Source of the DNA: Rebecca billardiae RCC1528 | Taxonomy: Eukaryota > Protista > Haptophyta | Assembly: GCA_965240325.2 (NCBI GenBank) | Contig: OZ251241.1 | Location: 1,426,001-1,490,000 of the forward strand | DNA length: 64,000 bases | Direction: 5' to 3' | In this document: in pieces, positions 2,409-29,843 of the stretch | How the letters are laid out: the number at the start of each line of letters is the position of its first letter | Position numbering within the stretch: the stretch's first letter is position 1 | Notes under the pieces: model-generated | Seen by the model: only the letters and a program-made list of their open reading frames with translations | Database searches by the model: none | What the model was told of the DNA's origin: nothing | Made by a program: the position numbers and the translations under genes

Positions 2409-4717
2409 GTTTGTCTCACCAGCCAAAGGTGTCCAGCCAAGGGCCTTGGTCCAGCGACAGGGTGAGGCCACTTCACCGAAATCCAGGTTGGGGAGGATCT
2501 CCGCTGCACTGGTGGGGAGGATGTCATCCTCCCCGCTCGCCACGGCTGGGGAGGATGTCCGCCGCGCTGTCCGGTCTTTCGCCGCTGACAAAACTTTCGA
2601 AAACGAAAGTCGCGCCATGGCGGACCCGGTGTTCCCGCCCGGCGGCGAAAGGGGCGCGGGGCCGGTGGCTCGCGATCCGAAGGGCAGTAGCTCGCGACCT
2701 CGCTTGGGCGGTGGCAGCGGCGCTGTGGCACGGCGTGTACCATCCGCGCGGCTGTGCGCGATCGCGCGGTCCCGTTCGCCGCCACGCCGCGCGCGACCGT
2801 TCACGCCACAGTCTGTCCGCACTGGCATGCACCCGTTGCAAGCGCATGACGGCGGAGAGCTCAGAGAGCCCGTCACGCGCGTGACGACCGTGTGGGATGG
2901 GTTGTGCCGATATGAAGGCTGCCCTTCGTAGGCTTTCTGATGAGCCCATCCAACGTTCAGACCGTTCCTAACTGCTGAAAGATGAGTCATCGCCTGCCAC
3001 ACGGCCATGGAGTTGTGGACAGTACAGCAGCCGTCCATGATCCTCATGCCCACCTCATGGGCCGGCGCGTGCCTCCCTGAACATGAAGACAAGCTGTACA
3101 ACCCATCCCACACGGTCGTCACGCGCGTGACGGGCTCTCTGAGCTCTCCGCCGTCATGCGCTTGCAACGGGTGCATGCCAGTGCGGACAGACTGTGGCGT
3201 GAACGGTCGCGCGCGGCGTGGCGACGAACGGGACCGCGCGATCGCGCACAGCCGCGCGGATGGTACACGCCGTGCCACAGCGCCGCTGCCACCGCCCAAG
3301 CGAGGTCGCGAGCTACTGCCCTTCGGATCGCGAGCCACCGGCCCCGCGCCCCTTTCGCCGCCGGGCGGGAACACCGGGTCCGCCATGGCGCGACTTTCGT
3401 TTTCGAAAGTTTTGTCAGCGGCGAAAGACCGGACAGCGCGGCGGACATCCTCCCCAGCCGTGGCGAGCGGGGAGGATGACATCCTCCCCACCAGTGCAGC
3501 GGAGATCCTCCCCAACCTGGATTTCGGTGAAGTGGCCTCAGGGTCCGCAACGCCGTGCGCAGCGCGGCAAGGCTATGTCATGAGTCATCCGGCAAGGTCG
3601 CCGCTCGCCAGTGGCACTCGCCCGTCCACCGCCGTGCACGGCGGCGGGGCCGCTCGCGCCGTGCGCTCCTGCGGCCGTCGGATCGGGCTGCGTAGGCGGC
3701 GCGTGGCTTGGGCCGTCGCAGAGCCACCCAGCACCCCTCTCTGCGCCGCGCGCCTTCCTCGTCCTCGCCTCCTCCGCGCCTTGGAGCAGCACGCACACGC
3801 ACGGCGCCGCACAAAGGCAGCCCAGGCGCTCGCGTGCAAGCGTGCGCGCGCGCAGCGCGACGGGCTCGACTCAGGGCTATCGCCGCTGCGGGGGCATGCA
3901 ACACCGTATCATGCGCGCGCGACGCCACCTCGAGCCTGCGCATCGCTCTGACCTTCACGCGGCAAATGCTCACACGTCCTCGTGTTGAAGTAGGCCCAAT
4001 CTGACCAGAACCTGCCATGCGTCAGGACGACTTCTTAGGCAAGACACGATGACAGCTACGTACGCGGCGCTTCTCAGCAAGCGTAGAGACCACAAGAGAA
4101 GCGCGCGCAATCATGACCGTCTCCGCATCGATCGCGTCGACGCACTCAAGGCCCGATGTGGAAGCTTTCCTCGCACGTGTGATGATGCCAAGTCAGACCA
4201 TTTTGTAACGTGCATCGGCGTGCACTGACGGTCAAACCCGCAGGCTCGAGGTGGCGTCGCGCGCGCATGATACGGTGTTGCATGCCCCCGCAGCGGCGAT
4301 AGCCCTGAGTCGAGCCCGTCGCGCTGCGCGCGCGCACGCTTGCACGCGAGCGCCTGGGCTACCTTTGTGCGGCGCCGTGCGTGTGCGTGCTGCTCCAAGG
4401 CGCGGAGGAGGCGAGGACGAGGAAGGCGCGTGGCGCAGAGAGTAGCGCTGGGCGGCTCTGCGACGGCTGAAGCCCCGCGCCGCCTCAGCGGCCCGACCCG
4501 ACGGCCGCAGGAGCGCACGGCGCGAGCGGCCCCTCCGCCGTGCACGGCGGCGGGCGGGCGAGTGCCACTCCGACTGGCGAGCGCGCGGCGACCTTGCGAT
4601 GGCACAGCCTCTGCCGCGCTTGCGCACTGGCTGTTGCGGAGGCACCCTGATACCCTTCCGCTTGGTCTCACTTTGGCGGCGGGGGGGGGGGGGGGGGGGG
4701 GGCACTTTGAGACAAAC
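2409..4717. mobile_element. Older foldback/MITE-like element (degenerate inverted arms ~2409-2463+3545-3940 vs 4239-4717), interrupted by a younger insertion
   Basis: 3545-3940 is an imperfect reverse complement of ~4239-4650. The distal gtttgtctca (2409-2418) pairs with tgagacaaac (4708-4717). Confidence 0.65.
2464..3539. mobile_element. Young foldback element: 442-bp near-perfect inverted arms, 192-bp spacer, 5-bp TSD AGGGT
   Basis: 2464-2905 is the reverse complement of 3098-3539 (I noticed one mismatch). Termini GAGGCC...GGCCTC. AGGGT at both 2459-2463 and 3540-3544. Confidence 0.9.
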
Positions 4718-5581
4718 CGCGTGCGCACGTCCGACGAGCTCACCAACTGGGGAGAGCAAGCTTCCCATGGGCTCTTGGCGCGTATCTGGCGTCCCTACTA
4801 CTGTACCTCCCATGGCATGCAGCCAGCCGTCAGGTTGGCGTCATCCCTTGCAGTAGTAGACTACCTTGCTCACGTCACTGACTAGGGCACCGTGCATCGC
4901 GGTCCGCGGCCGTCTCACAGTGGCGGGGGCACGTTCTGTGACGGGCGCCCTGACTCTACGTTAGTGGTGCGTACAGGCCAGGCATGGGCAGCGGAGCGGC
5001 CGGCAAACGAGCGGAGGTGCCAGGCACGCACCTTGGGCACACATGTGACGCGCCTTGACAGACTTATTGCGTCCGCACCTCACTGCCGCGGGCGCTGTAG
5101 CGCGTGTGAGCGGCGGGCGGCCATGGCACCACGCGGTCCTACGACAACGGTCCGAACTCGGACACGGTGCGCCGCACTGCCAGTGGGCGCCGCCACTGGC
5201 CCAAGCTGCGGTCGGACTGCCAGGCCGCCACTGCCACTGGGCCGCCGCCTGCTTTGTCTACTCAATAAAGTGCGCGCCAATAAAGTGCCCTGCTCGTCGT
5301 CGTCATCTGATGATCCGTGATGTCTCAAAGTTCTGCGCTGCTGAGACTACTGATCTATCACTGAATCTCGGATATGGCGGTCGTCAGATGATATTGTCGT
5401 CTACGACTACTAGCTATTGATGATGATGCCCTCATCTGACCTGATGACGATGCATGTAACGACGAAACTATACGTATATACATATATATATATATCAAGT
5501 GATGTCGATATATATGAGAGTTGCAGAGACGGCTGTCGCGGACGAGTGTGCCACTGTCGTCAGTCGTGTCCGACGTCAGCG

Positions 5582-8500
5582 TCACTGTCCGACGTCGACG
5601 TCAGCGGGACGGCCGCCCGCCGGACGAGTCGGCCTGGATCCGCCGCCGCCGCCGCGCTTGCCGCGCGCAGAGTAGCTGGCCCACTTCGCCTCGAGCAGCC
5701 GCAGCTGCTCCTCCTGCTCCGCCTGCAGCTGCGCGGCGCCGGCGGGCGAGGCGGAGGAGTCCGCGTGCGCGCCGCCGCTCGACGCATCGGCGGCGGCGGA
5801 CGCGCTCGCCGCCGAGCTGCTGCTGTGGTCGCGCGTGCCGCCGCCGCTGCCCAGGGCCGCCGCCTTGCCGCGGCGGTGCGCGTGGTGCGCCGCAATCAGG
5901 CTGGCCGACTCCGCCTCGGCGGCGCTGCCTTCGCTCACGCGGCCTCCGAACGAGCCCTCGCGCGACCCGCCGCCGCCCGGCAGCGGCCCCAGCTGCTGCT
6001 GCCGCCCCTGCTGCCCCGACAGCCGCATCGCGACGCCCGAGGCGAAGAGCTCGATCTGGGAGCGCGAGGAGCGGTTGCTCGGGAGGTGGTCGCGCGTGGC
6101 GCGCGTGCGCGATACGGCGGGCACCTGGTGCGGCGGCGGCGCGTACCAGTCGTCGCGCGAGCCCCTCAGCCCACTCCCGCGGCCCCCTGCCGCCCCGCCG
6201 CCGCCGCCGCCGCCGCCCCTCCGCCGCTGCTCCATCCAGGACGCGTGCAGCTGCGAGAGCTCCGAGAGAACACCCGTGTCCACCAGCGCCTCGGTGCTCG
6301 GGTCGGGCGCGGAGCGCAGCGCGCGAAGGCGCGGCGGCGAGTAGGGCTCGTCGTCGGAGTCCGAGTCCGCGGGGCCGCCCGTCGTGCCGCCGCGCCGCCC
6401 GCTGCCCCCGCGCCGCGACGGCGGCGGCGCCGCGCCGCCCAGGGCCTCGGGCCCGTCCGTCAGCTCGGCGACGTCCGCGGCTGGCGAGGGCGCGCGCGAG
6501 TGCTGCGCCCGCACTGGCAGCTGCGCCGGCGGCGGCAGCGGCGGCGGCGGGTGCGCGGAGGGCGCCTCGGCGGCGCTGGTGCGCGGGCCGAGCGAGGCGC
6601 GCTTGGCGCGCGCCTCATCCGCAGCGTGCACGGCGCGGCTCGCGATTCGGCTGAGGCTCTTGGGCGGCGGCGCCGGCCGCATCGGCGCGACGGGCGCGCC
6701 GCCGCCCACGGGCGCCGCGCCGCCGCCGCGGGCTGGCAGGCCGCTGGCGCCGTGGGCGGGGCTGGCCATGCTGCTGCCGCGCGAGGGCCACGAGTACCGC
6801 CCCTTGAGCGGCGCGCTCGACGGCGCGCCGCTTGTGCCGCTTGTGCGCTCCGGCGCGCGCTGCTGCGCCAACCGCTCAGAAATCGCCGGCGTGGTGCTGT
6901 GGCTGCGCGCGCGCGGGCCGAGGCCGAGCGCGGCGCCTGCGGCGGCGGTGGACGCGGTCGGGGAGATGGCGTTGCCCTCGCCCGCGCCCACGCCCGCGCC
7001 CACGCCCGCGCCCTTCCGCCCGAGCAGCTCGCGCATCCGGCCGCGCGCGCGCGCCGCCGCGGACGGGCGCACGTAAAACAAGTACTCCTCCAACTGCTCG
7101 ACCAGCCCGCCGAAGAAGTGGGCGGGAAACACGGAGTCACGGAGCGGCAGCACGAGGGCCTGGATGAGCTGCGAGGTGTGCGTGTCGCTCTGCAGCGCCA
7201 TCGCCCACAGCCCGAGCACCGTGTCCACCTGCGCCGTCGTCGGCCGGTGCGCGCGTCGGGCGGGCCGCGCGCGGCGGGGCGCCGGGAGAGCACCGGTGAG
7301 CGAATGGCGGCGGCGGCGCGGCGCGCGGTGGCGCGCGGCGCGCTGCGGAGCCACAGGCGGGCAGGCGGCGGCGGCGGCGGCGGCGACGCACCAGCTTGGG
7401 CTTGTCGTCCTCGTTGGTGAACTCGCCTGCGTCGCAACGAGCGCGCGCGCGCAGGGATGTAGAGAGCGAGCGAGACACGGGGGCACGCACGGGGGGCTCA
7501 GCCGCGCCGCGCCAGGCAGCCGCGCATGCCGCGCGCGCCGCGCTTGCCGCGCCGCGCGCGAGCGCCGCGCCGCCCGCGCCGCGCACCGTCAAAGACGCGA
7601 ATCGAGTCGAGCCACCAGTCGTCGTAGTTGAGCTCGGCGACGGGCTGCAGCTCGCCGCCGCCGTCCTCGCACACGTACATCCGCTCGCCCGCGCCGCCCG
7701 CCAGCGCCGCCCACTGCTCGAGCCGCGTCCAGCCGCGCGTCTGGTAGCTCGCCTTGTCACACTTGGCCCCGTGGTCGCGGTGCGTGGTCGGCGGCGCGAC
7801 CGCGAGGAAGTGGTGGGCTGTGGAGGCGTAGAGATGGAGGGAGCCGATGGAGAGGGCCTTGAGCGCGTCGCACGTCTGCGGCACCGAGACGTAGTCGATC
7901 TGCGCGCCGCGAGGCCACGCGCGCGCCGACGCGCCGAGGTCACGCGCGCGCAGACGCGCGCGGCGGCGCGCGCCGCGCGAGACCGCGCGGTCGAGCGCGC
8001 GAGCGCGCGGCGCGGTGCGGTGCGGTGCGGTGCGGTGCGCGGCGCGGCCGTGCTCACCCAGAGATAGACCGAGTCCGGGTCGATGCCTGCGCGCGTGCAC
8101 AGCGCGTCCACCGCGCGCACGATGCACGGGTAGTGCACGCCCTCCGGGTCCGGCTCGTCGAAGGCCAGCCACTGCGAGCGGCGCGCGCCCGCGGCGGTGG
8201 CGGCGGTGGCGGCGGCGTGTGAGCCCTTGACGGCGCGGCGCGGCGCGGCGCGGCGCGGCGCGGCGCGGCGCGGCGCGGCGCGGCGCGGCCGGCGCGGCGC
8301 GCGCCGGCGGCGGTGGCGGCGTGGGGCCGCGGCGGCGCGCAGCGCGGCGGCGCGCGGCGCGCGGGCTCGCGACGGCGCACCTGGTGCGAGACGAACACGA
8401 GCGTGTGCTCCGCCGCGAACTCGAGCACCTGCCCGTAAGTGTCGCAAACAACCAGCTCCGCCGCGTCGCGCACCGCCTCGTGCGGCAGCAGCTGGCCGTG

Positions 8501-11500
8501 GGCTCGGAAGTGGCGGAGGGGGACGTAGCACGCGGGGTAGGAGACGACGGTGGAGGCCTCGGTGGCGCGCACGACGCGCTCGGACATCTCCTTCTGCTGC
8601 TGCCGCCGCGCGGACTCGGCGGCGCGGTACCGCAGCACCGCCACCAAGAGCGCAGCACAGAGCAACACCGCGCCCGCCGCCGCGCCCGCCACCGCGGCAA
8701 TGATCACAAGCCAGCGCGCCGACCCCTGCGGCTGCGAGGCGGGCGGCGCGGCGCGCTCCTTGCCGCCGCCGCCGTCGTCGTCGTCGTCATCGTCGTCGTC
8801 GTCGTCGTCAGCGGCGGCATCGGTGCTGCCGCCCGCGCCGCCCGCGCTGCCGTCCGCGGGCGGCGCCGTGCCGCCGTGCGCGAACACGACACTTCCGGAA
8901 AGTTCCCACCGGCCGCCGGCGTACGCGCCGACGTCGACGAGGGCAGGCGGCGCGCCGCCGGCCGGGCGCACAACGTTGGCGAGGCGGAAGGCGGCGGTGC
9001 GCGCCGAGCGGTCGCCGCGCTCGTCCAGCTCGACCGAGCCCGACAGCCCGTCGAACGTCGGCAGCCGCGCCTCGCCATCCCACCAGCGCACACCCGCAAA
9101 CGCTGGCCGCGCGAGCCCGACGCTCGCGCCGCCGGCCGCCGCCGCGCGCGACGCGCGGCACGCGGCGAGGCCGAGGGCGAGGACGGCGTCGAAGGCGAAG
9201 GCGGCGGCGTGGTCCGGCACGGCGCCGGCGCCGAAGTAGTCGGGCGGCAGCCCCTCCGCGCCCGGCGGCAGCAGACCGTTCACCGCCTCGGGCGCGATCA
9301 GAGCGCCGCGCGCCCACGCGGCCGAAAATTCCTCCCAGCCCGCTCGACCGTCGACGCCGCCGCGCGCGCTCACGTGCGTCGCGCCGACGAGCGCGTCGGA
9401 GAGCGTCGGCTGGCGCTCGGCGAGCTCGGCGAGGGCGCGCGCCGAGCTCGCGCCGGTGAGCACCCAGTGGTACCCGCCGCCCACCAGCCCCAGCGCCGTC
9501 GCGTTCGCCAGCAGCTGCGACAAGTCCTCGTCGTCCGCGGCCGCGACGACCACCCGCGCGCCCGCGTCGCGCACGCGCGCGAGCGCGGCCGCGAGCGAGG
9601 GGGAGTCGAGGCGGTCGTACGGGGCGTCGACGAGCTCGATCCCGCGCGCGACCGCCTCGCTCGCCAGCGCCGCGCCGAGCCCCGCGCCGAACGCGTCGCG
9701 CGCGTGCACGCACGCCGCGCGCCGCCACCCGAACGCGCGCAGATGCTCGGCGATGGCGCTCGCGCCGAGTGAATCCGAAGGAACGGTCCGGGCGAAGGTG
9801 GGGTAGCGGGCCGGATCGGCGAGCTCGGGCGCGGTGGAGGCGTACGAGAGGAGGGGCACACCGTGCAGCCCCGCCAGCGTCGCGACGGGCACCGACACGG
9901 CCGAGCGCGCCGCGCCCACCACCGCATCCCATGACGAGAGCGCCGCGCCGACACCCGCCGCCGCCGCCGCCGCGCCGCCGCCACCGTCCGCCGCGGCGGA
10001 TGCGTCGCACGCGGATGCGCCGCCGGCCGAGTCGGCCGAGCACGCGCCGCCGGCGCGGCCGTCGATGTACGCCGCGGCGCCCGCCGCGGCGTCCCCGTCC
10101 GTCGAGCGCAGGTGCAGCACGAGCTGCACGTCGCACGGCGCGCCGGCCGCGGCGCCGGCCGCGCCGGCCGCGGCCGTGAGCGCGCCGCCGCCGGCCGCGG
10201 CCGGCACGGAGGGCAGGAGCGAGGCGTTGCGGGCGTTCCACAGCCGCGCGGCGGCGAGCGCGGCGATCATCGCGTCGCGCTCGGCGGGGTGCGCCACCGA
10301 GCCCGCCCCGCGCCACAGCCGGCCGAGCACGCCCACGTGCACCACGAGCGCGGCGAGGCCATCCGGCGGCGCGGCCGCCGAGCCGTCAGCAAACGTGAGC
10401 GGCGGCGCGCCGGCCGCGTCCGCCCAGCTGCCGTCCGCGGCGGCGTACGTGGCGACGGCGGTGAGCGCGGGGGGGGCGGTGCCGTCGGCGTCGGGGTAGA
10501 GCACGTTGAGCAGCTCGTACGCCAGGTCCGATCCTTCTCGCTCGCCCGTGCGCGCGTCGAAGCGCACGCGCCCGCTCATGCCGATAAAGTCGAGCGCGCG
10601 CACCGCGCCGCTCAGCCGCGCGGCGTCGGCGAGCGCGGCGCCGTCGGCGAGCGCGCACGCGGCGAGGCCGAGGGCGGCGACGGCGTCGTACGAGTAGGCG
10701 ACGCGAGGGGACGGCACGAGCGGCGCGCCGCTCGCGTTCGCGCCCGTCAGCCACGCCGCCGCCGCGCTCGCCGACGCCGCCGAGGGCATCGCGCCAACCG
10801 CCGCCGCCGCGTCCACCGTCGCCCACGCGGGCTCCGAAAATGCGCCGAAAGCGCCCGCGCGGTCGGCGCTCGGGCCGACGCGCACGGCGCCGTGGAGCAG
10901 CCGGCGCGCGCTCGGGCCCGTCGCGCCCGCGAGCGCGCCCTCGCTCACCCCGTCCGCCAGCACCACGTGCGAGTCCGGGCCGCCCAGTCCGGCCGCCGCC
11001 GCCGCCTCGAGCACGGCGCCGAGCTGGCCGTCGGCGATCGCTCCGACGAGCACGCGCACCGGCGCGCCCGAGAGGGAGGTCATGCGCCGCGCGGCGGCGA
11101 GGAGGGCGGGCGGGTCGTCGTCAGGCCCGATCGAGCCGCGCACCACGCGCACGCGCGCCTCGGCGCACAGCGCCTCGAGCGCGTCCGCCAGGCCGGCGCC
11201 GACCGCGTCGGTTCCGTGCAGCAGACCAATCTCGCGCCAGCCGTGCCGCGCGAGGTGCGCGGCGATGGCGGCGGCGGTGGCGCGGTCGCTCGCGACGGTG
11301 CGCGAGAAGAAGGCGTGCTCCACGGCGGACAGCGCGACCGCGCTCGACGCCGGCGAGACCTGCACGATCGGCACCGCCGGCCCGATGGCTGCCATCGGCA
11401 GCGAGGCGGCCGAGTCGTGCGCGCCGACCACGGCGTGCCAGCCGCGCGTGCGGCGGCCGTCGACGAGGGCGCGGGTGGCCGTGGCCGGGTCGTGCTCGCT

Positions 11501-11758
11501 GTCCACGACCTCCACCGCCAGCCGCGCCTCGCACCCGCGCACGGCCGAGCCGTTCAGCGCGCCCACGACCGCCGGCGAGCGCGCGTTGAAATGCGCAGCG
11601 GCCGCGAGCGCGCCGAGCGCGTGCTCGACGTGCGCGGCGTCGAGCGGCATGACGAGTCCCAGCTTGAGGTCGAAGGGCGCGCCTCCCACCGAGGCGAGCC
11701 ATGCAAGGCACAACGCGCGCGCCAACCGGCGCGCGCCCGGCGGGCTGCGCCCGGTCAT
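5582..11758 (-). CDS. Single-pass receptor: signal peptide + two tandem Venus-flytrap (ANF-receptor/class C GPCR-type ligand-binding) domains + TM + cytosolic HET/TIR-like domain + low-complexity tail; exons 11758-8381, 8171-8058, 7899-7587, 7426-7392, 7228-5582
   Basis: VFT motifs QVSPASSAVALS...FSRTVASD and LLSYASTAPELADPARYPTFARTVPSD. TM WLVIIAAVAGAAAGAVLLCAALLVAVL. Spliced cytosolic domain VFVSHQW...YLWIDYVSVPQ...RGWTRLEQW...FDGEFT. Four GT-AG introns restore the frame. Confidence 0.8.
8232..8290. repeat. Intronic (GCGCG/CGCGG)n pentamer microsatellite
   Basis: Tandem cgcgg units read directly. Similar pentamer runs occur in other introns (8010-8045, 58390-58440). Confidence 0.8.
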
Positions 11759-26891: not shown

Positions 26892-29843
26892 CTACACGGC
26901 AGCGGACCACGAGAAGCCGGCCAGCGCCTGGCGCATCGCAGCGTGCGTCGCGCGGTTGAACTTGTCCGCCGCGTCCGCCTCCGCCTCGTCGAACAGGGCC
27001 TCGAGCAACCCGAAGATGATATGCCTGTCCTCCTCCACGGAGGACATGGAGGCGCGCACGTCGAACGTGGTCAGCGCCGAGACGAACGCGGAGCGGTCGC
27101 GCGCGAGCGCCGCCGCGACCGCGCGGAGCTCGTCGGTGGGCAGCGCCAGCCCGATCGGCAGTTCCTCGAGCGCGGCGATGAGCACCTCGACTGGCGGTCG
27201 GGGCGGCGGTGCGGTGCGGCGCGCACGCGCGGGGCGGGCGCGCGGGCGTGAGCGGTGCGCGCTCGCGAGGTGCACGCGCCCCGCCGCGTGCCCCGCGCGC
27301 CCGCGCGCCCCCACCGCCGCGCGCACAGAGGCACCACGCGCGCGTGAGGCACACGGGCGCCGTCCACGGCTGCAGCACGAGCACGACCCGCCCAGTCGCG
27401 CGCACGACGTCGCCGATGTGCCGAACTTCTTGTCGGGTGGTGCCCTGGCGCATGCAGAGGACGTCGATCCCTGCGCCGCGCGGCGCGAGGCGCGGCGGGG
27501 CGCGGGGCACGCGCGCGCGCCGCGGCGTGAGCCGTGCGCGGGCATGGGGGCGACGGCGGAGGGCGCGAGCTCGGCAGCGCGCGCGCCCCCACGCGCGCGC
27601 ACACACGCCGCGCCGGCGGCCCGCCCACTGGCTCGGGTGGGGTCGGGGCGGCGCGAGGCCGCGCGCGAGCCAGCCGGCGCGCGCGGCGCGAGCTCGCGAA
27701 AGCGCACGCACGGTGCGCGCGGTGACGCACTGCCGCGCCCGCCGCTGCGCGCGAGATGCAATCTCGCCGCGCGCGAGATGCAATCTCGCGGGGAGCGCGC
27801 GCGCGCGCGCACACGGAGGCGCGCGAGATGCAATCTCGCGGGGAAGGCGCGCGCGCGCACGCGCGCACAGAGGTAGGTGTCTGTGGGCTTCAGGTCGTGG
27901 ATGCGCGCGTACAGCTCGATGGCGGAGAGCATCGCGTCGAAGTCGCACGCCTGCGCGTGGCTCACGAACAGGTTCGCGCGCGCCACCGCCGCGGAGCCGT
28001 CCGTCGTGCGCCTGCCCTCCACCATCTCCACCAGTGAACTCGGACCGGCCGCCGGCCCGCCCAGCCCGCGTAATCGGCGCGCGGCCGGGGACGCGCTGAG
28101 CTGCCGGGCGACGAGTCCGATTTGGTAGGAGGCGACGCCGCGCGGGGCGCCGAGCTCGGCCTGCAGCGCGCGCACGTACCCCAGCTGCACGCCCAGCAGC
28201 AGGTGCGGCCGCTCCGCCGCGAGCTCGGCCGCTTCGGGCAGAGCGATGGTGACGGTGGCGGCGGCGGTGGCGCCGGCCGCGGCGGCGCTCGGCCGGCTCT
28301 GCGCGGTTGGATAGATGATGTGTGACCGCGGCCGCTGCTGCGTGAACACGGCTTGCGTGTGCGCGGTCGAGACCAGGCTGTGCGGCGTGCGGCGAGCCTC
28401 CGCCGAGAGCGCACCGCTCGCGACGCAGCGGCACAGCCGGCGCACCGCACGCCACGCAAGCGAGCACAGCCGCGCCGCGGCCGCGAGCAGAGCGCGCGAC
28501 GCCCGCTCGAGGGGCCATGGCGCGAGCTCGCGGCCGAGCGGTGCGAACGTGGTGGCGTGCACGGCGGCGCTGCCGTTGAGCGCGGTGTGGAAGACGCCGA
28601 CCACGACGCAGTTGGCCCACGGCCGCACCATCGCGGCGGGCAGCCCCATCCCCGCAAACAGCGCGATCGCAGACGCTAGGTTGGTGCATCCCATCGCGCG
28701 AGTCAGCCGGCGCGCGACGCCCGGCGGCAGCGACGTGAGCACCTTGCGCGCGCGCCAGTGCGTGTGCAGCGAGAGCGCGAGGACGAGGAGCGGGAGCAGC
28801 ACGGCGCCGGTGCCCACCTGCACGACCTCCAGTGCCTGCGGCGCCGAGAAGAACCAGCACGCGCCCGTCCCGACGTCGAGCGCAGCAATGGCCGCCACGA
28901 ACGCAAGCAGCCGGCGGCGCGCGCGCGGGCTGTGCGCGAGCGTGGGCGAGGCGAAGCGCGCGCCGTCGACGTCGGCGGAGGGCCACGCGGCCTGCGCCCA
29001 GTAGAGCAGGAAGAGGGTGCCCGCGACCACGCCGATCGAGACGTACGCGATGAAGAGGATCAGCCACACCGGGTATGGCACACGCACTGGGCCGTGCAAG
29101 CACCGGATGCCGAGCCGGAGCAGCTGCGCGGCCAGCTCGAGCAGCAGCACCGCCTGCGCGATGCCCGGCGACAGGCGGCCGTCCGCGCGGTAGAAGGCGC
29201 GCAGCCGGTTGACGAGGAGCTCGACGAGCACGGCGTGCTGCACGCCGAGCAGCACGTCGCGCGCGACCCATGCGGGTGAGAAGGGCAAAGCGGCCCACAC
29301 CGTCTCCGAGCGGGCAAAGCGCGCGCGCACGTCCGCGCCCGCGAGGAGCGCGTCCATCAGCGGCTGCGCGCCGCGGTGCGTGATGTCGGCGGCGGGCGGG
29401 TGGGGCAGGCTGCGCGAGTCGCCCGGCCAGAAGTGGTGGTACCGCCATCCCGGCAGCGGGTCGAAGGCCAGGCCGGCCGCGCCGCTATAGAGGAGGTACC
29501 CGACCGCGCCCGCGGCGCCCGCGGCGCGCGCGATCGACTCGAGCGAGCAGTCGCTGAGCGGCGGGCTGTGCTTCACGACGATGGTGCCGTCGAGCGAGCG
29601 CGCGCCCACGTACACGGGCGGGCACAGCCGGTCGTTCCACTCGTCCGACGGCGTGAGCACCACGCGCGCGCGCACGTCAAACGCGGCGGGCGTGAACGCG
29701 AACGGCGCGGCGAGGAGCTCGACGCCGAGAAGGTGCGGCGGGCCGGCCTCGATGACGAGGCGCGCGCTCGCGGGGCGCGCCGCGAGGAGCGTGAGGAGGG
29801 CGACGACGGGCGCCCGTCGCAGCCACGGGCGCCGCTGGCGCAT
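26892..29843 (-). CDS. Receptor-like protein: signal peptide + PA (protease-associated) domain + 7 TM + cytosolic HET/TIR-like domain; two introns (~27868-27471 and ~27326-27192)
   Basis: PA-like segment LDGTIVV...CSLESIARAAGAAGAVGYLLY...ADITHRGAQPL. Seven hydrophobic helices. Spliced FVSHAQAC...YLWIDVLCMRQ...LQPWTAPVCLTRAWCLFEV. Confidence 0.75.
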   Translation of the reverse strand: MRQRRPWLRRAPVVALLTLLAARPASARLVIEAGPPHLLGVELLAAPFAFTPAAFDVRARVVLTPSDEWNDRLCPPVYVGARSLDGTIVVKHSPPLSDCSLESIARAAGAAGAVGYLLYSGAAGLAFDPLPGWRYHHFWPGDSRSLPHPPAADITHRGAQPLMDALLAGADVRARFARSETVWAALPFSPAWVARDVLLGVQHAVLVELLVNRLRAFYRADGRLSPGIAQAVLLLELAAQLLRLGIRCLHGPVRVPYPVWLILFIAYVSIGVVAGTLFLLYWAQAAWPSADVDGARFASPTLAHSPRARRRLLAFVAAIAALDVGTGACWFFSAPQALEVVQVGTGAVLLPLLVLALSLHTHWRARKVLTSLPPGVARRLTRAMGCTNLASAIALFAGMGLPAAMVRPWANCVVVGVFHTALNGSAAVHATTFAPLGRELAPWPLERASRALLAAAARLCSLAWRAVRRLCRCVASGALSAEARRTPHSLVSTAHTQAVFTQQRPRSHIIYPTAQSRPSAAAAGATAAATVTIALPEAAELAAERPHLLLGVQLGYVRALQAELGAPRGVASYQIGLVARQLSASPAARRLRGLGGPAAGPSSLVEMVEGRRTTDGSAAVARANLFVSHAQACDFDAMLSAIELYARIHDLKPTDTYLCARVRARAFPARLHLARLRVRARARSPRDCISRAARLHLARSGGRGSASPRAPCVRFRELAPRAPAGSRAASRRPDPTRASGRAAGAACVRARGGARAAELAPSAVAPMPAHGSRRGARACPAPRRASRRAAQGSTSSACARAPPDKKFGTSATSCARLGGSCSCCSRGRRPCASRARGASVRAAVGARGRAGHAAGRVHLASAHRSRPRARPARARRTAPPPRPPVEVLIAALEELPIGLALPTDELRAVAAALARDRSAFVSALTTFDVRASMSSVEEDRHIIFGLLEALFDEAEADAADKFNRATHAAMRQALAGFSWSAAV

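What the first reader, a model, noticed from the sequence alone, without database searches (positions are those of the whole stretch)
5582..11758. Double Venus-flytrap, single-pass receptor ending in a HET-like domain
Seen: two complete tandem VFT modules (~11670-10370 and ~10340-8860), an acidic linker, one TM, then a four-intron HET-like domain. Established: this VFT type normally feeds a 7TM (class C GPCR), an ion channel (iGluR) or a guanylyl cyclase, usually as a single copy. Inference: a small-molecule (amino acid/GABA-like) sensor directly gating a HET/TIR-like enzyme. The tandem pair could act as an intramolecular pseudo-dimer or a two-ligand gate.
Basis: partly seen in the sequence, partly recalled or inferred. 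Interest (0 to 1): 0.8.

Follow-up and report, generated by a model that had tools for sequence, protein, structure and literature searches.

The report
Tandem Venus-flytrap receptor with HET-like output
This is a real, intact algal gene for a single-pass surface receptor that joins two glutamate-receptor-like ligand-binding clamshells to a cytosolic domain distantly related to the fungal HET cell-death domain; it belongs to a large, uncharacterised family of marine-protist receptors that share this output domain.

Summary
A five-exon minus-strand gene (11758-5582, 1828 aa) encodes a probable signal peptide, two ANF_receptor VFT modules (Pfam E 6.5e-23 and 8.5e-42), a 12-Asp stalk, one TM helix, a ~275-aa cytosolic domain split by four GT-AG introns, and a ~500-aa low-complexity tail.

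The VFTs and the output domain belong to one gene. The domain's first ~70 residues lie in the same exon as the VFTs and TM. A family HMM built only from relatives matches the spliced protein end to end (E 2.6e-105), with the exon pieces tiling it.

The domain belongs to an unnamed family with at least 666 cluster representatives, apparently mainly haptophyte. All 17 invariant residues are kept here. HET (PF06985) is the only recurrent Pfam match, at or below threshold. The best reviewed fold match is Podospora HET-E-1. TIR resemblance is weak.

Relatives fuse the same TM-plus-domain unit to other ectodomains: single VFT, other solute-binding folds, Cache, FG-GAP and Ig-like. One metagenomic homologue also has two VFTs.

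Ligand and enzymatic activity are untested. No RNA-seq run was listed. The scan noted this gene in an overlapping window, and an unchecked second tandem-VFT/HET gene elsewhere in the genome. A 2025 G. huxleyi paper describes similar receptor-like 'TIR' genes.

The parts
11681..11758 (-). Start codon (first ATG, 10 codons after an in-frame stop) and probable signal peptide, aa 1-26
   Evidence: Arg-rich n-region followed by a hydrophobic stretch, judged by inspection.
10349..11677 (-). VFT1, a type-1 PBP/ANF_receptor module (aa ~28-470; Pfam core aa 79-403)
   Evidence: Pfam PF01094, E 6.5e-23, profile 24-337 of 353. Nearest solved relatives are a bacterial extracellular ligand-binding receptor (4mlc, E 6e-8) and mGluR6.
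8864..10336 (-). VFT2, a class-C-GPCR-like ANF_receptor module (aa ~475-965; Pfam core aa 601-919) with an Ala/Gly-rich insert near its N-terminus
   Evidence: Pfam PF01094, E 8.5e-42. mGluR7, 6, 8, 2 and 3 match at E 1e-19 to 1e-16, CaSR at 1e-12. The residue alignment to mGluR7 shows the shared SYASTAPEL motif. VFT2 is 36% identical to VFT1.
8774..8809 (-). Acidic stalk: 12 consecutive Asp (aa 984-995). No Cys-rich domain lies between VFT2 and the TM helix
   Evidence: sequence read directly.
8630..8713 (-). The only predicted transmembrane helix (aa 1016-1043)
   Evidence: Kyte-Doolittle 19-residue window up to 2.58; no other segment exceeds 1.9. It starts 107 aa before the SHQW motif, the same spacing as in 31 of 33 long relatives.
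7082..8596 (-). Cytosolic HET-like domain (aa 1055-1329) spread over exons 1-5
   Evidence: Family HMM built from relatives only: E 2.6e-105, HMM positions 2-275 of 276. Exon pieces tile the HMM at 2-73, 73-113, 112-213, 212-226 and 225-275. The domain is 34-45% identical to 34 relatives.
8172..8380 (-). Intron 1 (209 nt), falling between Q1126 and W1127 inside the SHQW motif; made of a (CGGCG)n-type repeat
7900..8057 (-). Intron 2 (158 nt), between W1164 and I1165 of the LW|IDYVSVPQ motif
7427..7586 (-). Intron 3 (160 nt), phase 1
7229..7391 (-). Intron 4 (163 nt)
7717..7737 (-). RGWTRLE motif (R1219-E1225). E1225 is the invariant Glu and the candidate catalytic residue
   Evidence: Invariant R, G, W, R and E in alignment A1; mapped onto this protein.
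5582..7081 (-). C-terminal low-complexity tail (aa 1330-1828) and TGA stop (5584-5582)
   Evidence: No Pfam hit. Third-position GC of 0.94-0.97 in frame supports translation.

Best explanation
This is a type-I single-pass cell-surface chemoreceptor of a GC-rich marine alga, probably a haptophyte. Two tandem class-C-GPCR-type Venus-flytrap modules face outwards on an acidic stalk. One TM helix links them, at a fixed spacing, to a ~275-aa cytosolic domain of a large protist family remotely homologous to the fungal HET domain, which the literature treats as a distant TIR relative. Proposed mechanism (inferred): a small polar ligand, most likely an amino acid or related metabolite, closes one or both clamshells. 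That changes the orientation or oligomeric state of the TM helix and juxtamembrane helix, and brings the HET-like domains into an active assembly. The assembly then acts as a TIR-type NAD(P)+/nucleotide-processing enzyme using the invariant Glu (E1225) or, less likely, as a homotypic scaffold. Shown here: the gene structure, the domain content, family membership, retention of all invariant residues, and the modular use of the domain behind many sensor ectodomains. Inferred: the ligand class, the activation mechanism and the catalytic chemistry.
For: Gene model: the frame is preserved across four canonical introns. The exon pieces tile a family HMM that excludes this protein, and the spliced protein scores E 2.6e-105. 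It aligns end to end with more than 40 independent proteins at E 1e-52 to 1e-79. Third-position GC periodicity runs through the whole CDS.

VFTs: Pfam. mGluR-like lobe 1, including the Ser and Thr that I equate with mGluR1 S165 and T188 from my own indexing.

Output domain: 666 cluster representatives at E<=1e-3. All 17 invariant residues are kept. HET is the only recurrent Pfam family, matching 9 of 34 members with best E 1.4e-5. AFDB cluster matches reach TM 0.85-0.90; several are named 'Heterokaryon incompatibility domain-containing', and others carry Cache, CHASE or receptor ligand-binding regions. The top Swiss-Prot fold hit is HET-E-1 residues 8-245 (probability 0.97), with HET-6 at rank 4. 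HET dominates the named ESM-Atlas neighbours. The domain core aligns with TIR, nucleoside deoxyribosyltransferase and SEFIR structures at Z 4-5.3.

Receptor logic: 31 of 33 long relatives have a TM segment about 107 aa upstream of SHxW. Their ectodomains include type-1 PBP, Phosphonate-bd, OpuAC, Cache, FG-GAP and Ig-like.

Literature: HET shares remote similarity with TIR, including the functional Glu (PMC4986451, PMC9153377). G. huxleyi has ectodomain-TM-'TIR' genes expressed from 0.5 h after EhV infection (PMC12489294).
Against: There is no transcript evidence: no sequencing run was listed. This protein itself could not be scanned as a spliced sequence; its separate exon pieces give no Pfam HET hit, and the scanned relative scores 14.6 bits against a cut-off of 22.5. 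No member hits any Pfam TIR model at E<=10 or any PADLOC model. No solved structure matches above Z 6, and GT-B fucosyltransferase half-domains score as well as TIRs. The structural equivalence of E1225 to the TIR catalytic Glu was not verified. HET itself has no demonstrated enzymatic activity (PMC10197012). The near-invariant Cys before the Glu is Thr here. The ectodomain model was too poor to judge how the two VFTs pack.
Confidence: 0.6

Rival explanations
1. Same receptor, but the HET-like domain is a non-catalytic adaptor. Ligand-induced clustering nucleates homotypic assemblies with soluble proteins carrying the same domain, as animal TLR, MyD88 and MAL TIR domains do.
For: Many short or soluble family members exist, with MORN, LRR_6, ankyrin, HNOB or EF-hand partners. 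Dyrka et al. proposed an adaptor role for HET (PMC4986451). No enzymatic activity has been shown for HET (PMC10197012).
Against: The invariant set is polar and charged (H, E, R, S, H, D, D, Q, R, E), which resembles an active site more than an interface. The Glu reported as shared between HET and TIR is kept (PMC9153377).
Confidence: 0.27
2. The cytosolic domain is a Rossmann-like nucleotide- or nucleotide-sugar-binding enzyme whose chemistry is unrelated to TIR, for example a glycosyltransferase-like half-domain. Its resemblance to HET and TIR would then reflect only a common fold.
For: The best VIA-align Z scores go to the C-terminal halves of the NodZ, FUT8, FUT1 and POFUT2 fucosyltransferases and of trehalose-6-phosphate synthase (Z 5-6), equal to or above the TIR matches.
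Against: Those matches cover one half of a two-domain GT-B enzyme and are within the noise range given by the tool. Sequence-based evidence (Pfam HET hits) and the top reviewed fold hit (HET-E-1) point to HET instead.
Confidence: 0.07
3. The gene model is wrong: the VFT/TM part and the HET-like part are separate transcripts, or the locus is a pseudogene.
For: There is no RNA evidence. In ~80% GC DNA, long ORFs arise by chance in many frames.
Against: The conserved domain begins about 70 residues before the end of exon 1, in the same uninterrupted ORF as the VFTs and TM. Every junction restores a gap-free match to the family HMM. An intronless metagenomic homologue encodes the same layout in one ORF. 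All invariant residues are intact.
Confidence: 0.03

Closest known systems
Receptor-like 'TIR' genes of Gephyrocapsa (Emiliania) huxleyi, e.g. cogent1101_i1 (PMC12489294)
   Same: An extracellular region with structural similarity to leucine-binding (PBP) and EGF-like domains, one TM helix, and an intracellular TIR-type domain with a conserved Glu, in a haptophyte. Relative P0129 in my set has exactly Peripla_BP_6 + EGF + TM + this domain.
   Different: I could not obtain that protein's sequence, so I do not know whether its 'TIR' is this HET-like family. It is described with a single ligand-binding region, not a tandem pair. Its expression from 0.5 h after virus infection is known; nothing is known about expression of the present gene.
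Fungal HET domain proteins (Podospora HET-E-1, Neurospora HET-6 and TOL; Pfam PF06985)
   Same: Three conserved blocks in the same order: F-x-S-H-x-W, W-x-D-x-x-S/C-I-x-Q, and R-G-W-x-x-x-E. Pfam HET matches 9 of 34 relatives. HET-E-1 is the top reviewed fold match. Homologues in Haptophyceae have already been reported (PMC4986451).
   Different: The fungal proteins are cytosolic (NLR N-termini or HET-only proteins), not fused to a TM helix and ectodomain. The protist domain is larger (~275 aa), with a conserved juxtamembrane extension (HE..R motif) and a C-terminal helical part. Most members score below Pfam's cut-off.
Class C GPCR Venus-flytrap domains (mGluR7/6/8/2/3, CaSR)
   Same: VFT2 lobe 1 aligns at E ~1e-19, including the SYASTAPEL-type motif. 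By my own indexing, the Ser and Thr in it correspond to the residues that hold the ligand's alpha-amino-acid moiety.
   Different: There is no cysteine-rich domain and no 7TM domain. Instead there is one TM helix and a different output. The two VFTs are in tandem on one chain rather than one per subunit.
Natriuretic-peptide receptor / receptor guanylyl cyclases
   Same: ANF_receptor ectodomain, a single TM helix, and a cytosolic signalling domain.
   Different: No kinase-homology or cyclase domain was detected. Two VFTs are present.
Bacterial tandem-VFT sensors: BvgS (PMC4352136) and CdgH (PMC5431781)
   Same: Two tandem periplasmic clamshell domains, coupled through a TM segment to a cytosolic enzyme.
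   Different: Those use PBPb-type (type-2, on my own knowledge) VFT domains with histidine-kinase or diguanylate-cyclase outputs, and they are bacterial.
Toll-like / IL-1 receptors
   Same: The same logic: an ectodomain, one TM helix, and a juxtamembrane TIR-superfamily domain that signals on clustering.
   Different: Their ectodomains are LRR or Ig, with canonical TIR domains. Here the sensor is a small-molecule-type VFT and the output is HET-type.

Membership tests
ANF_receptor / type-1 periplasmic-binding-protein VFT (PF01094) | Score above the Pfam gathering threshold with near-full profile coverage, for each of the two modules | tested here: met
   81.8 bits (profile 24-337 of 353) and 143.9 bits (50-343 of 353), against a cut-off of 25.4.
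ANF_receptor / class C amino-acid-binding VFT | Lobe-1 Ser and Thr that bind the alpha-carboxylate/alpha-amino group (mGluR1 S165 and T188 equivalents, by my own indexing) | tested here: met
   In the VFT2 alignment to mGluR7, GAARSAVS pairs with GASGSSVS and SYASTAPEL with SYASTAPEL. VFT1 has Ser at both positions by inspection only. Lobe-2 contacts were not examined.
Class C GPCR | Seven-transmembrane domain and a cysteine-rich linker after the VFT | tested here: not met
   There is one hydrophobic segment only, no 7tm_3 hit, and no Cys in aa 966-1015.
Receptor guanylyl cyclase / iGluR | Kinase-homology plus cyclase domains, or a pore-forming channel domain | tested here: not met
   No such Pfam hit in any exon piece.
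Unnamed protist 'SHQW / WxDYxSIPQ / RGWCRLE' juxtamembrane domain family | End-to-end match to a family profile, and retention of the invariant residues | tested here: met
   HMM from 34 relatives: E 2.6e-105, positions 2-275 of 276. 17 of 17 invariant and 15 of 16 near-invariant residues are kept; C168 is T1222 here.
Unnamed protist 'SHQW / WxDYxSIPQ / RGWCRLE' juxtamembrane domain family | TM helix at a fixed distance upstream of the domain | tested here: met
   The TM window starts 107 aa before SHQW, as in 31 of 33 long relatives, where the spacing is mostly about 100-110 aa.
HET (PF06985) | Pfam score at or above the gathering threshold (22.5 bits) | tested here: inconclusive
   The spliced protein could not be submitted, and its exon pieces give no hit. 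Among relatives, 9 of 34 match at E<=10, best 1.4e-5. The first member scores 14.6 bits, aligned to profile 4-96 of 146.
HET (PF06985) | Three conserved sequence blocks in order | tested here: met
   VFVSHQW, LWIDYVSVPQ and RGWTRLE at aa 1121-1127, 1163-1172 and 1219-1225. The comparison with the HET blocks rests on PMC4986451 and my own knowledge.
HET (PF06985) | Fold shared with bona fide fungal HET domains | tested here: inconclusive
   In Swiss-Prot AFDB, HET-E-1 residues 8-245 is rank 1 (probability 0.97, but E 0.028 and TM 0.37) and HET-6 is rank 4. The model used is relative P0004, not this protein.
HET (PF06985) | Induces regulated cell death when expressed or activated | not testable with these tools
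   Needs an experiment.
TIR (PF01582, PF13676 and related) | Sequence match to a TIR profile | tested here: not met
   No TIR family appears among the Pfam hits at E<=10 for 34 members. No PADLOC hit. No PDB TIR hit by profile.
TIR (PF01582, PF13676 and related) | Flavodoxin-like TIR core with a catalytic Glu at the start of helix alpha-C | tested here: inconclusive
   Model residues ~60-213 align to AbTir, SARM1, SPARTA, MyD88 and MAL TIR domains at Z 4.2-5.3, within the tool's noise range. The invariant Glu lies at the start of a helix after a strand, but residue-level superposition was not available.
TIR (PF01582, PF13676 and related) | NAD+ hydrolase or cyclase activity | not testable with these tools
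   Needs a biochemical assay.
BvgS-type tandem-VFT sensor kinases | Type-2 PBP VFTs and a histidine-kinase output | tested here: not met
   The VFTs are type-1 (ANF_receptor / Peripla_BP_6), and no HisKA or HATPase_c hit was found.

The most novel reading that the evidence does not exclude
The HET-like domain is a ligand-gated TIR-type NAD(P)+/nucleotide-processing enzyme. On that reading, this family of hundreds of receptors with VFT, other solute-binding, Cache, FG-GAP and Ig-like ectodomains would be a previously unrecognised eukaryotic transmembrane chemosensory system. It would convert extracellular metabolites or infochemicals directly into nucleotide-derived second messengers or NAD+ depletion. 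In this member, the tandem VFT pair would act as an intramolecular pseudo-dimer integrating two ligands.
Probability: 0.25. Interest if true: 0.85.

Novelty: new variant of a known kind. Interest (0 to 1): 0.55.

Why it matters
HET is one of the most abundant cell-death-associated domains in fungi, yet it has no solved structure and no known biochemistry. Here a well-conserved relative is wired directly behind recognisable small-molecule sensor domains in abundant marine algae. That arrangement makes both questions testable: what HET-type domains do, and how they are switched on. A candidate ligand class and a candidate catalytic residue are available to work with. It would also bear on how bloom-forming algae sense nutrients, infochemicals or viral attack, since G. 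huxleyi expresses similar receptor-like 'TIR' genes early in infection. It extends the Toll-like logic of ectodomain, TM helix and TIR-superfamily output to metabolite sensors.

Tried and rejected
- **Whole exon-1 protein search and juxtamembrane-region search.** Neither gave a hit. Ala/Gly-rich words swamped the candidate list, and this protein is apparently not in that collection.
- **Third protein search, with P0074's domain.** It returned only 3 proteins, for the same reason.
- **Sequencing-run look-ups.** None was listed, so read laying could not be used and there is no transcript evidence.
- **Pfam on separate exon pieces of the domain.** Nothing was found. The spliced protein has no reference and was not typed in, so direct Pfam, structure and library searches of this protein's own domain were replaced by relatives (34-45% identical) and by local HMM work.
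- **Profile search of PDB sequences with A1 and PADLOC.** Nothing relevant.
- **Foldseek and VIA-align against the PDB.** No match above Z 6. TIR, NDT and SEFIR matches are not separable from GT-B half-domains.
- **Tree of VFT modules.** Unresolved. This protein's VFT1 and VFT2 pair weakly (87/90), but both have aberrant composition, so I cannot say whether the duplication is shared with P0074.
- **AF2 of the whole ectodomain with 8 sequences.** pLDDT 62.8 and pTM 0.49, too poor to judge VFT1-VFT2 packing. The secondary-structure pattern does repeat twice.
- **tblastn and HMM scan of the window for further copies of this domain subfamily.** None besides this gene.
- **Two-gene or pseudogene reading.** Rejected (see rivals).
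Full report
**1. What is there**

The minus strand between 11758 and 5582 carries one gene. The first exon is a 3378-nt open frame (11758-8381). Reading on from its end, four short introns (209, 158, 160 and 163 nt) with GTG(C/A)G donors and GCAG acceptors join exons 8171-8058, 7899-7587, 7426-7392 and 7228-5582 in frame. The product is 1828 aa and ends at TGA 5584-5582.

Third-codon-position GC is 0.90-1.00 in this frame along the whole CDS, including the long C-terminal tail. The introns are simple GC-rich repeats without codon periodicity. The DNA on either side drops to 0.56-0.57 GC. The many other long ORFs in the region are by-products of about 80% GC.

**2. Domain content**

- Pfam finds two separate ANF_receptor modules: aa 79-403 (E 6.5e-23) and aa 601-919 (E 8.5e-42). 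Both cover nearly the whole profile.
- A 12-Asp run follows at aa 984-995.
- The only strongly hydrophobic segment is aa 1016-1043.
- The N-terminus looks like a signal peptide, by inspection.
- There is no cysteine-rich domain, 7TM, kinase-homology, cyclase or channel domain.

VFT2 is distinctly class-C-GPCR-like. Its lobe 1 matches mGluR7, 6, 8, 2 and 3 at E 1e-19 to 1e-16, and CaSR at 1e-12. In the residue alignment to mGluR7 it shares the SYASTAPEL motif. It also keeps the Ser and Thr that, by my own indexing of mGluR1, correspond to S165 and T188, the residues holding the alpha-amino-acid moiety.

VFT1 is more divergent. Its nearest solved relatives are a bacterial extracellular ligand-binding protein (E 6e-8) and mGluR6. 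The two modules are 36% identical to each other.

**3. One gene or two?**

No sequencing run was listed for this DNA, so there is no transcript evidence. The homology evidence is nevertheless strong.

Exon 3 alone finds 666 cluster representatives at E<=1e-3 in a 1.84-billion-protein library. The spliced domain (aa 1054-1345) aligns without breaks over about 275 residues to more than 40 of them, at 35-47% identity and E 1e-52 to 1e-79.

An HMM built from 34 relatives only matches the spliced protein from position 2 to 275 of 276 (E 2.6e-105). The five exon pieces tile the HMM at 2-73, 73-113, 112-213, 212-226 and 225-275. Because positions 2-73 lie in exon 1, in the same uninterrupted ORF as both VFTs and the TM helix, the sensor and the output are physically one gene.

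A metagenomic homologue, P0074 (1472 aa, one intronless ORF on a 10.4-kb JGI contig), has the same order: two ANF_receptor modules, a TM helix, a conserved juxtamembrane segment and this domain.

**4. What the cytosolic domain is**

The family has 17 invariant positions: H-E-x-x-R in the juxtamembrane part, F-x-S-H-Q-W, P-D, W-x-D-Y-x-S-I-P-Q, and Y-x-x-R-G-W-C-R-L-E. All 17 are kept here: E1094, R1097, F1122, S1124, H1125, W1127, D1134, D1166, Q1172, I1182, F1195, Y1216, R1219, G1220, W1221, R1223 and E1225. Of 16 near-invariant positions, only the Cys before the Glu differs (T1222).

HET (PF06985) is the only Pfam family that recurs among members: 9 of 34, best E 1.4e-5, aligned over the first two blocks. 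Most members are below the gathering cut-off.

An AlphaFold model of the closest VFT-bearing relative (P0004:573-860, 44-46% identical to this protein's domain) is confident, with pLDDT 93.8 and pTM 0.91.
- In AFDB clusters it matches protist proteins at TM 0.85-0.90. Several are auto-named 'Heterokaryon incompatibility domain-containing protein'. Others are named for Cache, CHASE, ephrin-receptor-like or 'receptor ligand binding region' parts.
- Among 550,129 reviewed proteins, the top hit is the HET domain of Podospora HET-E-1 (residues 8-245, probability 0.97, E 0.028). Neurospora HET-6 is rank 4, followed by plant TIR proteins and ThsA.
- ESM-Atlas named neighbours are dominated by HET clusters, at low scores.
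- Against solved structures nothing exceeds Z 6. The core (model residues ~60-213) aligns with the TIR domains of AbTir, SARM1, SPARTA, MyD88 and MAL, with nucleoside deoxyribosyltransferases and with SEFIR at Z 4-5.3. GT-B fucosyltransferase halves score 5-6.
- No Pfam TIR model, PADLOC model or PDB sequence profile is hit.

The literature states that HET homologues occur in Haptophyceae and stramenopiles and that HET is remotely similar to TIR up to helix alpha-C, including the functional Glu (PMC4986451, PMC9153377). HET biochemistry is unknown (PMC10197012).

I therefore file the domain as a member of an unnamed protist family that is a remote HET homologue. TIR-like chemistry remains a hypothesis.

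**5. The family context**

Of 33 relatives with at least 300 residues before the domain, 31 have a strongly hydrophobic segment, in most cases starting about 100-110 residues before the SHxW motif. The spacing here is 107.

Their N-terminal parts carry:
- type-1 PBP/VFT (7, some with EGF; one double);
- Phosphonate-bd and OpuAC solute-binding folds;
- Cache, FG-GAP and Ig-like domains;
- beta-helix and LamG/pentraxin;
- a giant peroxidase/DOMON/cytochrome b561 array, also seen in a Prymnesium parvum protein.

Shorter members combine the domain with MORN, LRR, ankyrin, HNOB or EF-hand modules. The TM-plus-domain unit thus behaves as an interchangeable output module of surface receptors, many with small-molecule-type sensors.

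**6. Mechanism**

The best-supported reading is a ligand-regulated single-pass receptor. Clamshell closure would be transmitted through the TM and juxtamembrane helix and would alter the assembly of the HET-like domains.

By analogy with TIR enzymes, whose active sites form on self-association (PMC9153377), I favour activation by ligand-controlled oligomerisation, with E1225 as the catalytic residue. This step is inferred.

The adaptor alternative is the main rival. The pseudo-dimer or two-ligand idea for the tandem VFTs could not be tested. The ectodomain model was poor (pLDDT 62.8, pTM 0.49), although its secondary-structure pattern repeats twice. The VFT tree was unresolved.

**7. Novelty**

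The parts are known. The family's sequences are already in public databases with automatic names. Tandem VFT sensors exist in bacteria (BvgS, PMC4352136; CdgH, PMC5431781). A 2025 study describes G. huxleyi genes with a leucine-binding/EGF-like ectodomain, a TM helix and a 'TIR' domain expressed early in virus infection (PMC12489294).

I found no paper in the held library that describes VFT-TM-HET receptors or the fixed TM-HET-like module as a family.

I rate it a new variant of a known kind, of moderate-to-good interest.

First-stage notes of this scan flagged the same gene in an overlapping window. They also flagged many other HET/TIR-like receptor genes in this genome, including another tandem-VFT one, which I did not check.

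Noticed in passing
window 26892-29843 (-): A second receptor-like gene: a PA-like N-terminal region and multiple hydrophobic segments, followed by LFVSHAQ and, in other frames downstream, IDVLCMRQ and TRAWCLC motifs. This looks like a different HET/TIR-like subtype. It is not hit by the A1 family HMM.
   Followed up: partly
window ~58217 (+): Another LFVSHAQ motif on the plus strand, probably a paralogue of the 26892-29843 gene. First-stage notes describe a family of such receptors extending to 60282 in this window.
   Followed up: no
window 8172-8380, 7900-8057, 7427-7586, 7229-7391: All four introns are 158-209 nt long and 82-92% GC, and consist largely of short GC-rich tandem repeats such as (CGGCG)n and (GGC)n. 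They share near-identical GTGCG donors and GCAG acceptors.
   Followed up: partly
relatives P0001-P0150: The distance from the start of the TM segment to the SHxW motif is mostly about 100-110 aa in 31 of 33 long family members, regardless of ectodomain type. This suggests rigid coupling of the TM helix to the domain.
   Followed up: partly
P0145 (2731 aa) and P0167 (2397 aa, Prymnesium parvum): Giant proteins combine multicopper-oxidase, cytochrome b561, haem peroxidase and DOMON domains with a TM segment and the same HET-like domain at the C-terminus. This could be a redox-sensing version of the receptor.
   Followed up: no
L001 (JGI metagenome contig, 10439 nt), gene 3184-7602: An intronless double-VFT homologue (P0074) sits next to ShK-domain, 2OG-Fe(II) oxygenase and TPR genes. 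It contains a long Gly/Ser-rich insert inside the HET-like domain.
   Followed up: partly
window 5582-7081 (-): A ~500-aa Ala/Gly/Pro/Ser/Arg-rich C-terminal tail with no detectable domain but a clear coding GC3 signal. It ends with a short Gln/Glu/Leu-rich stretch that could form a helix or coiled coil.
   Followed up: no
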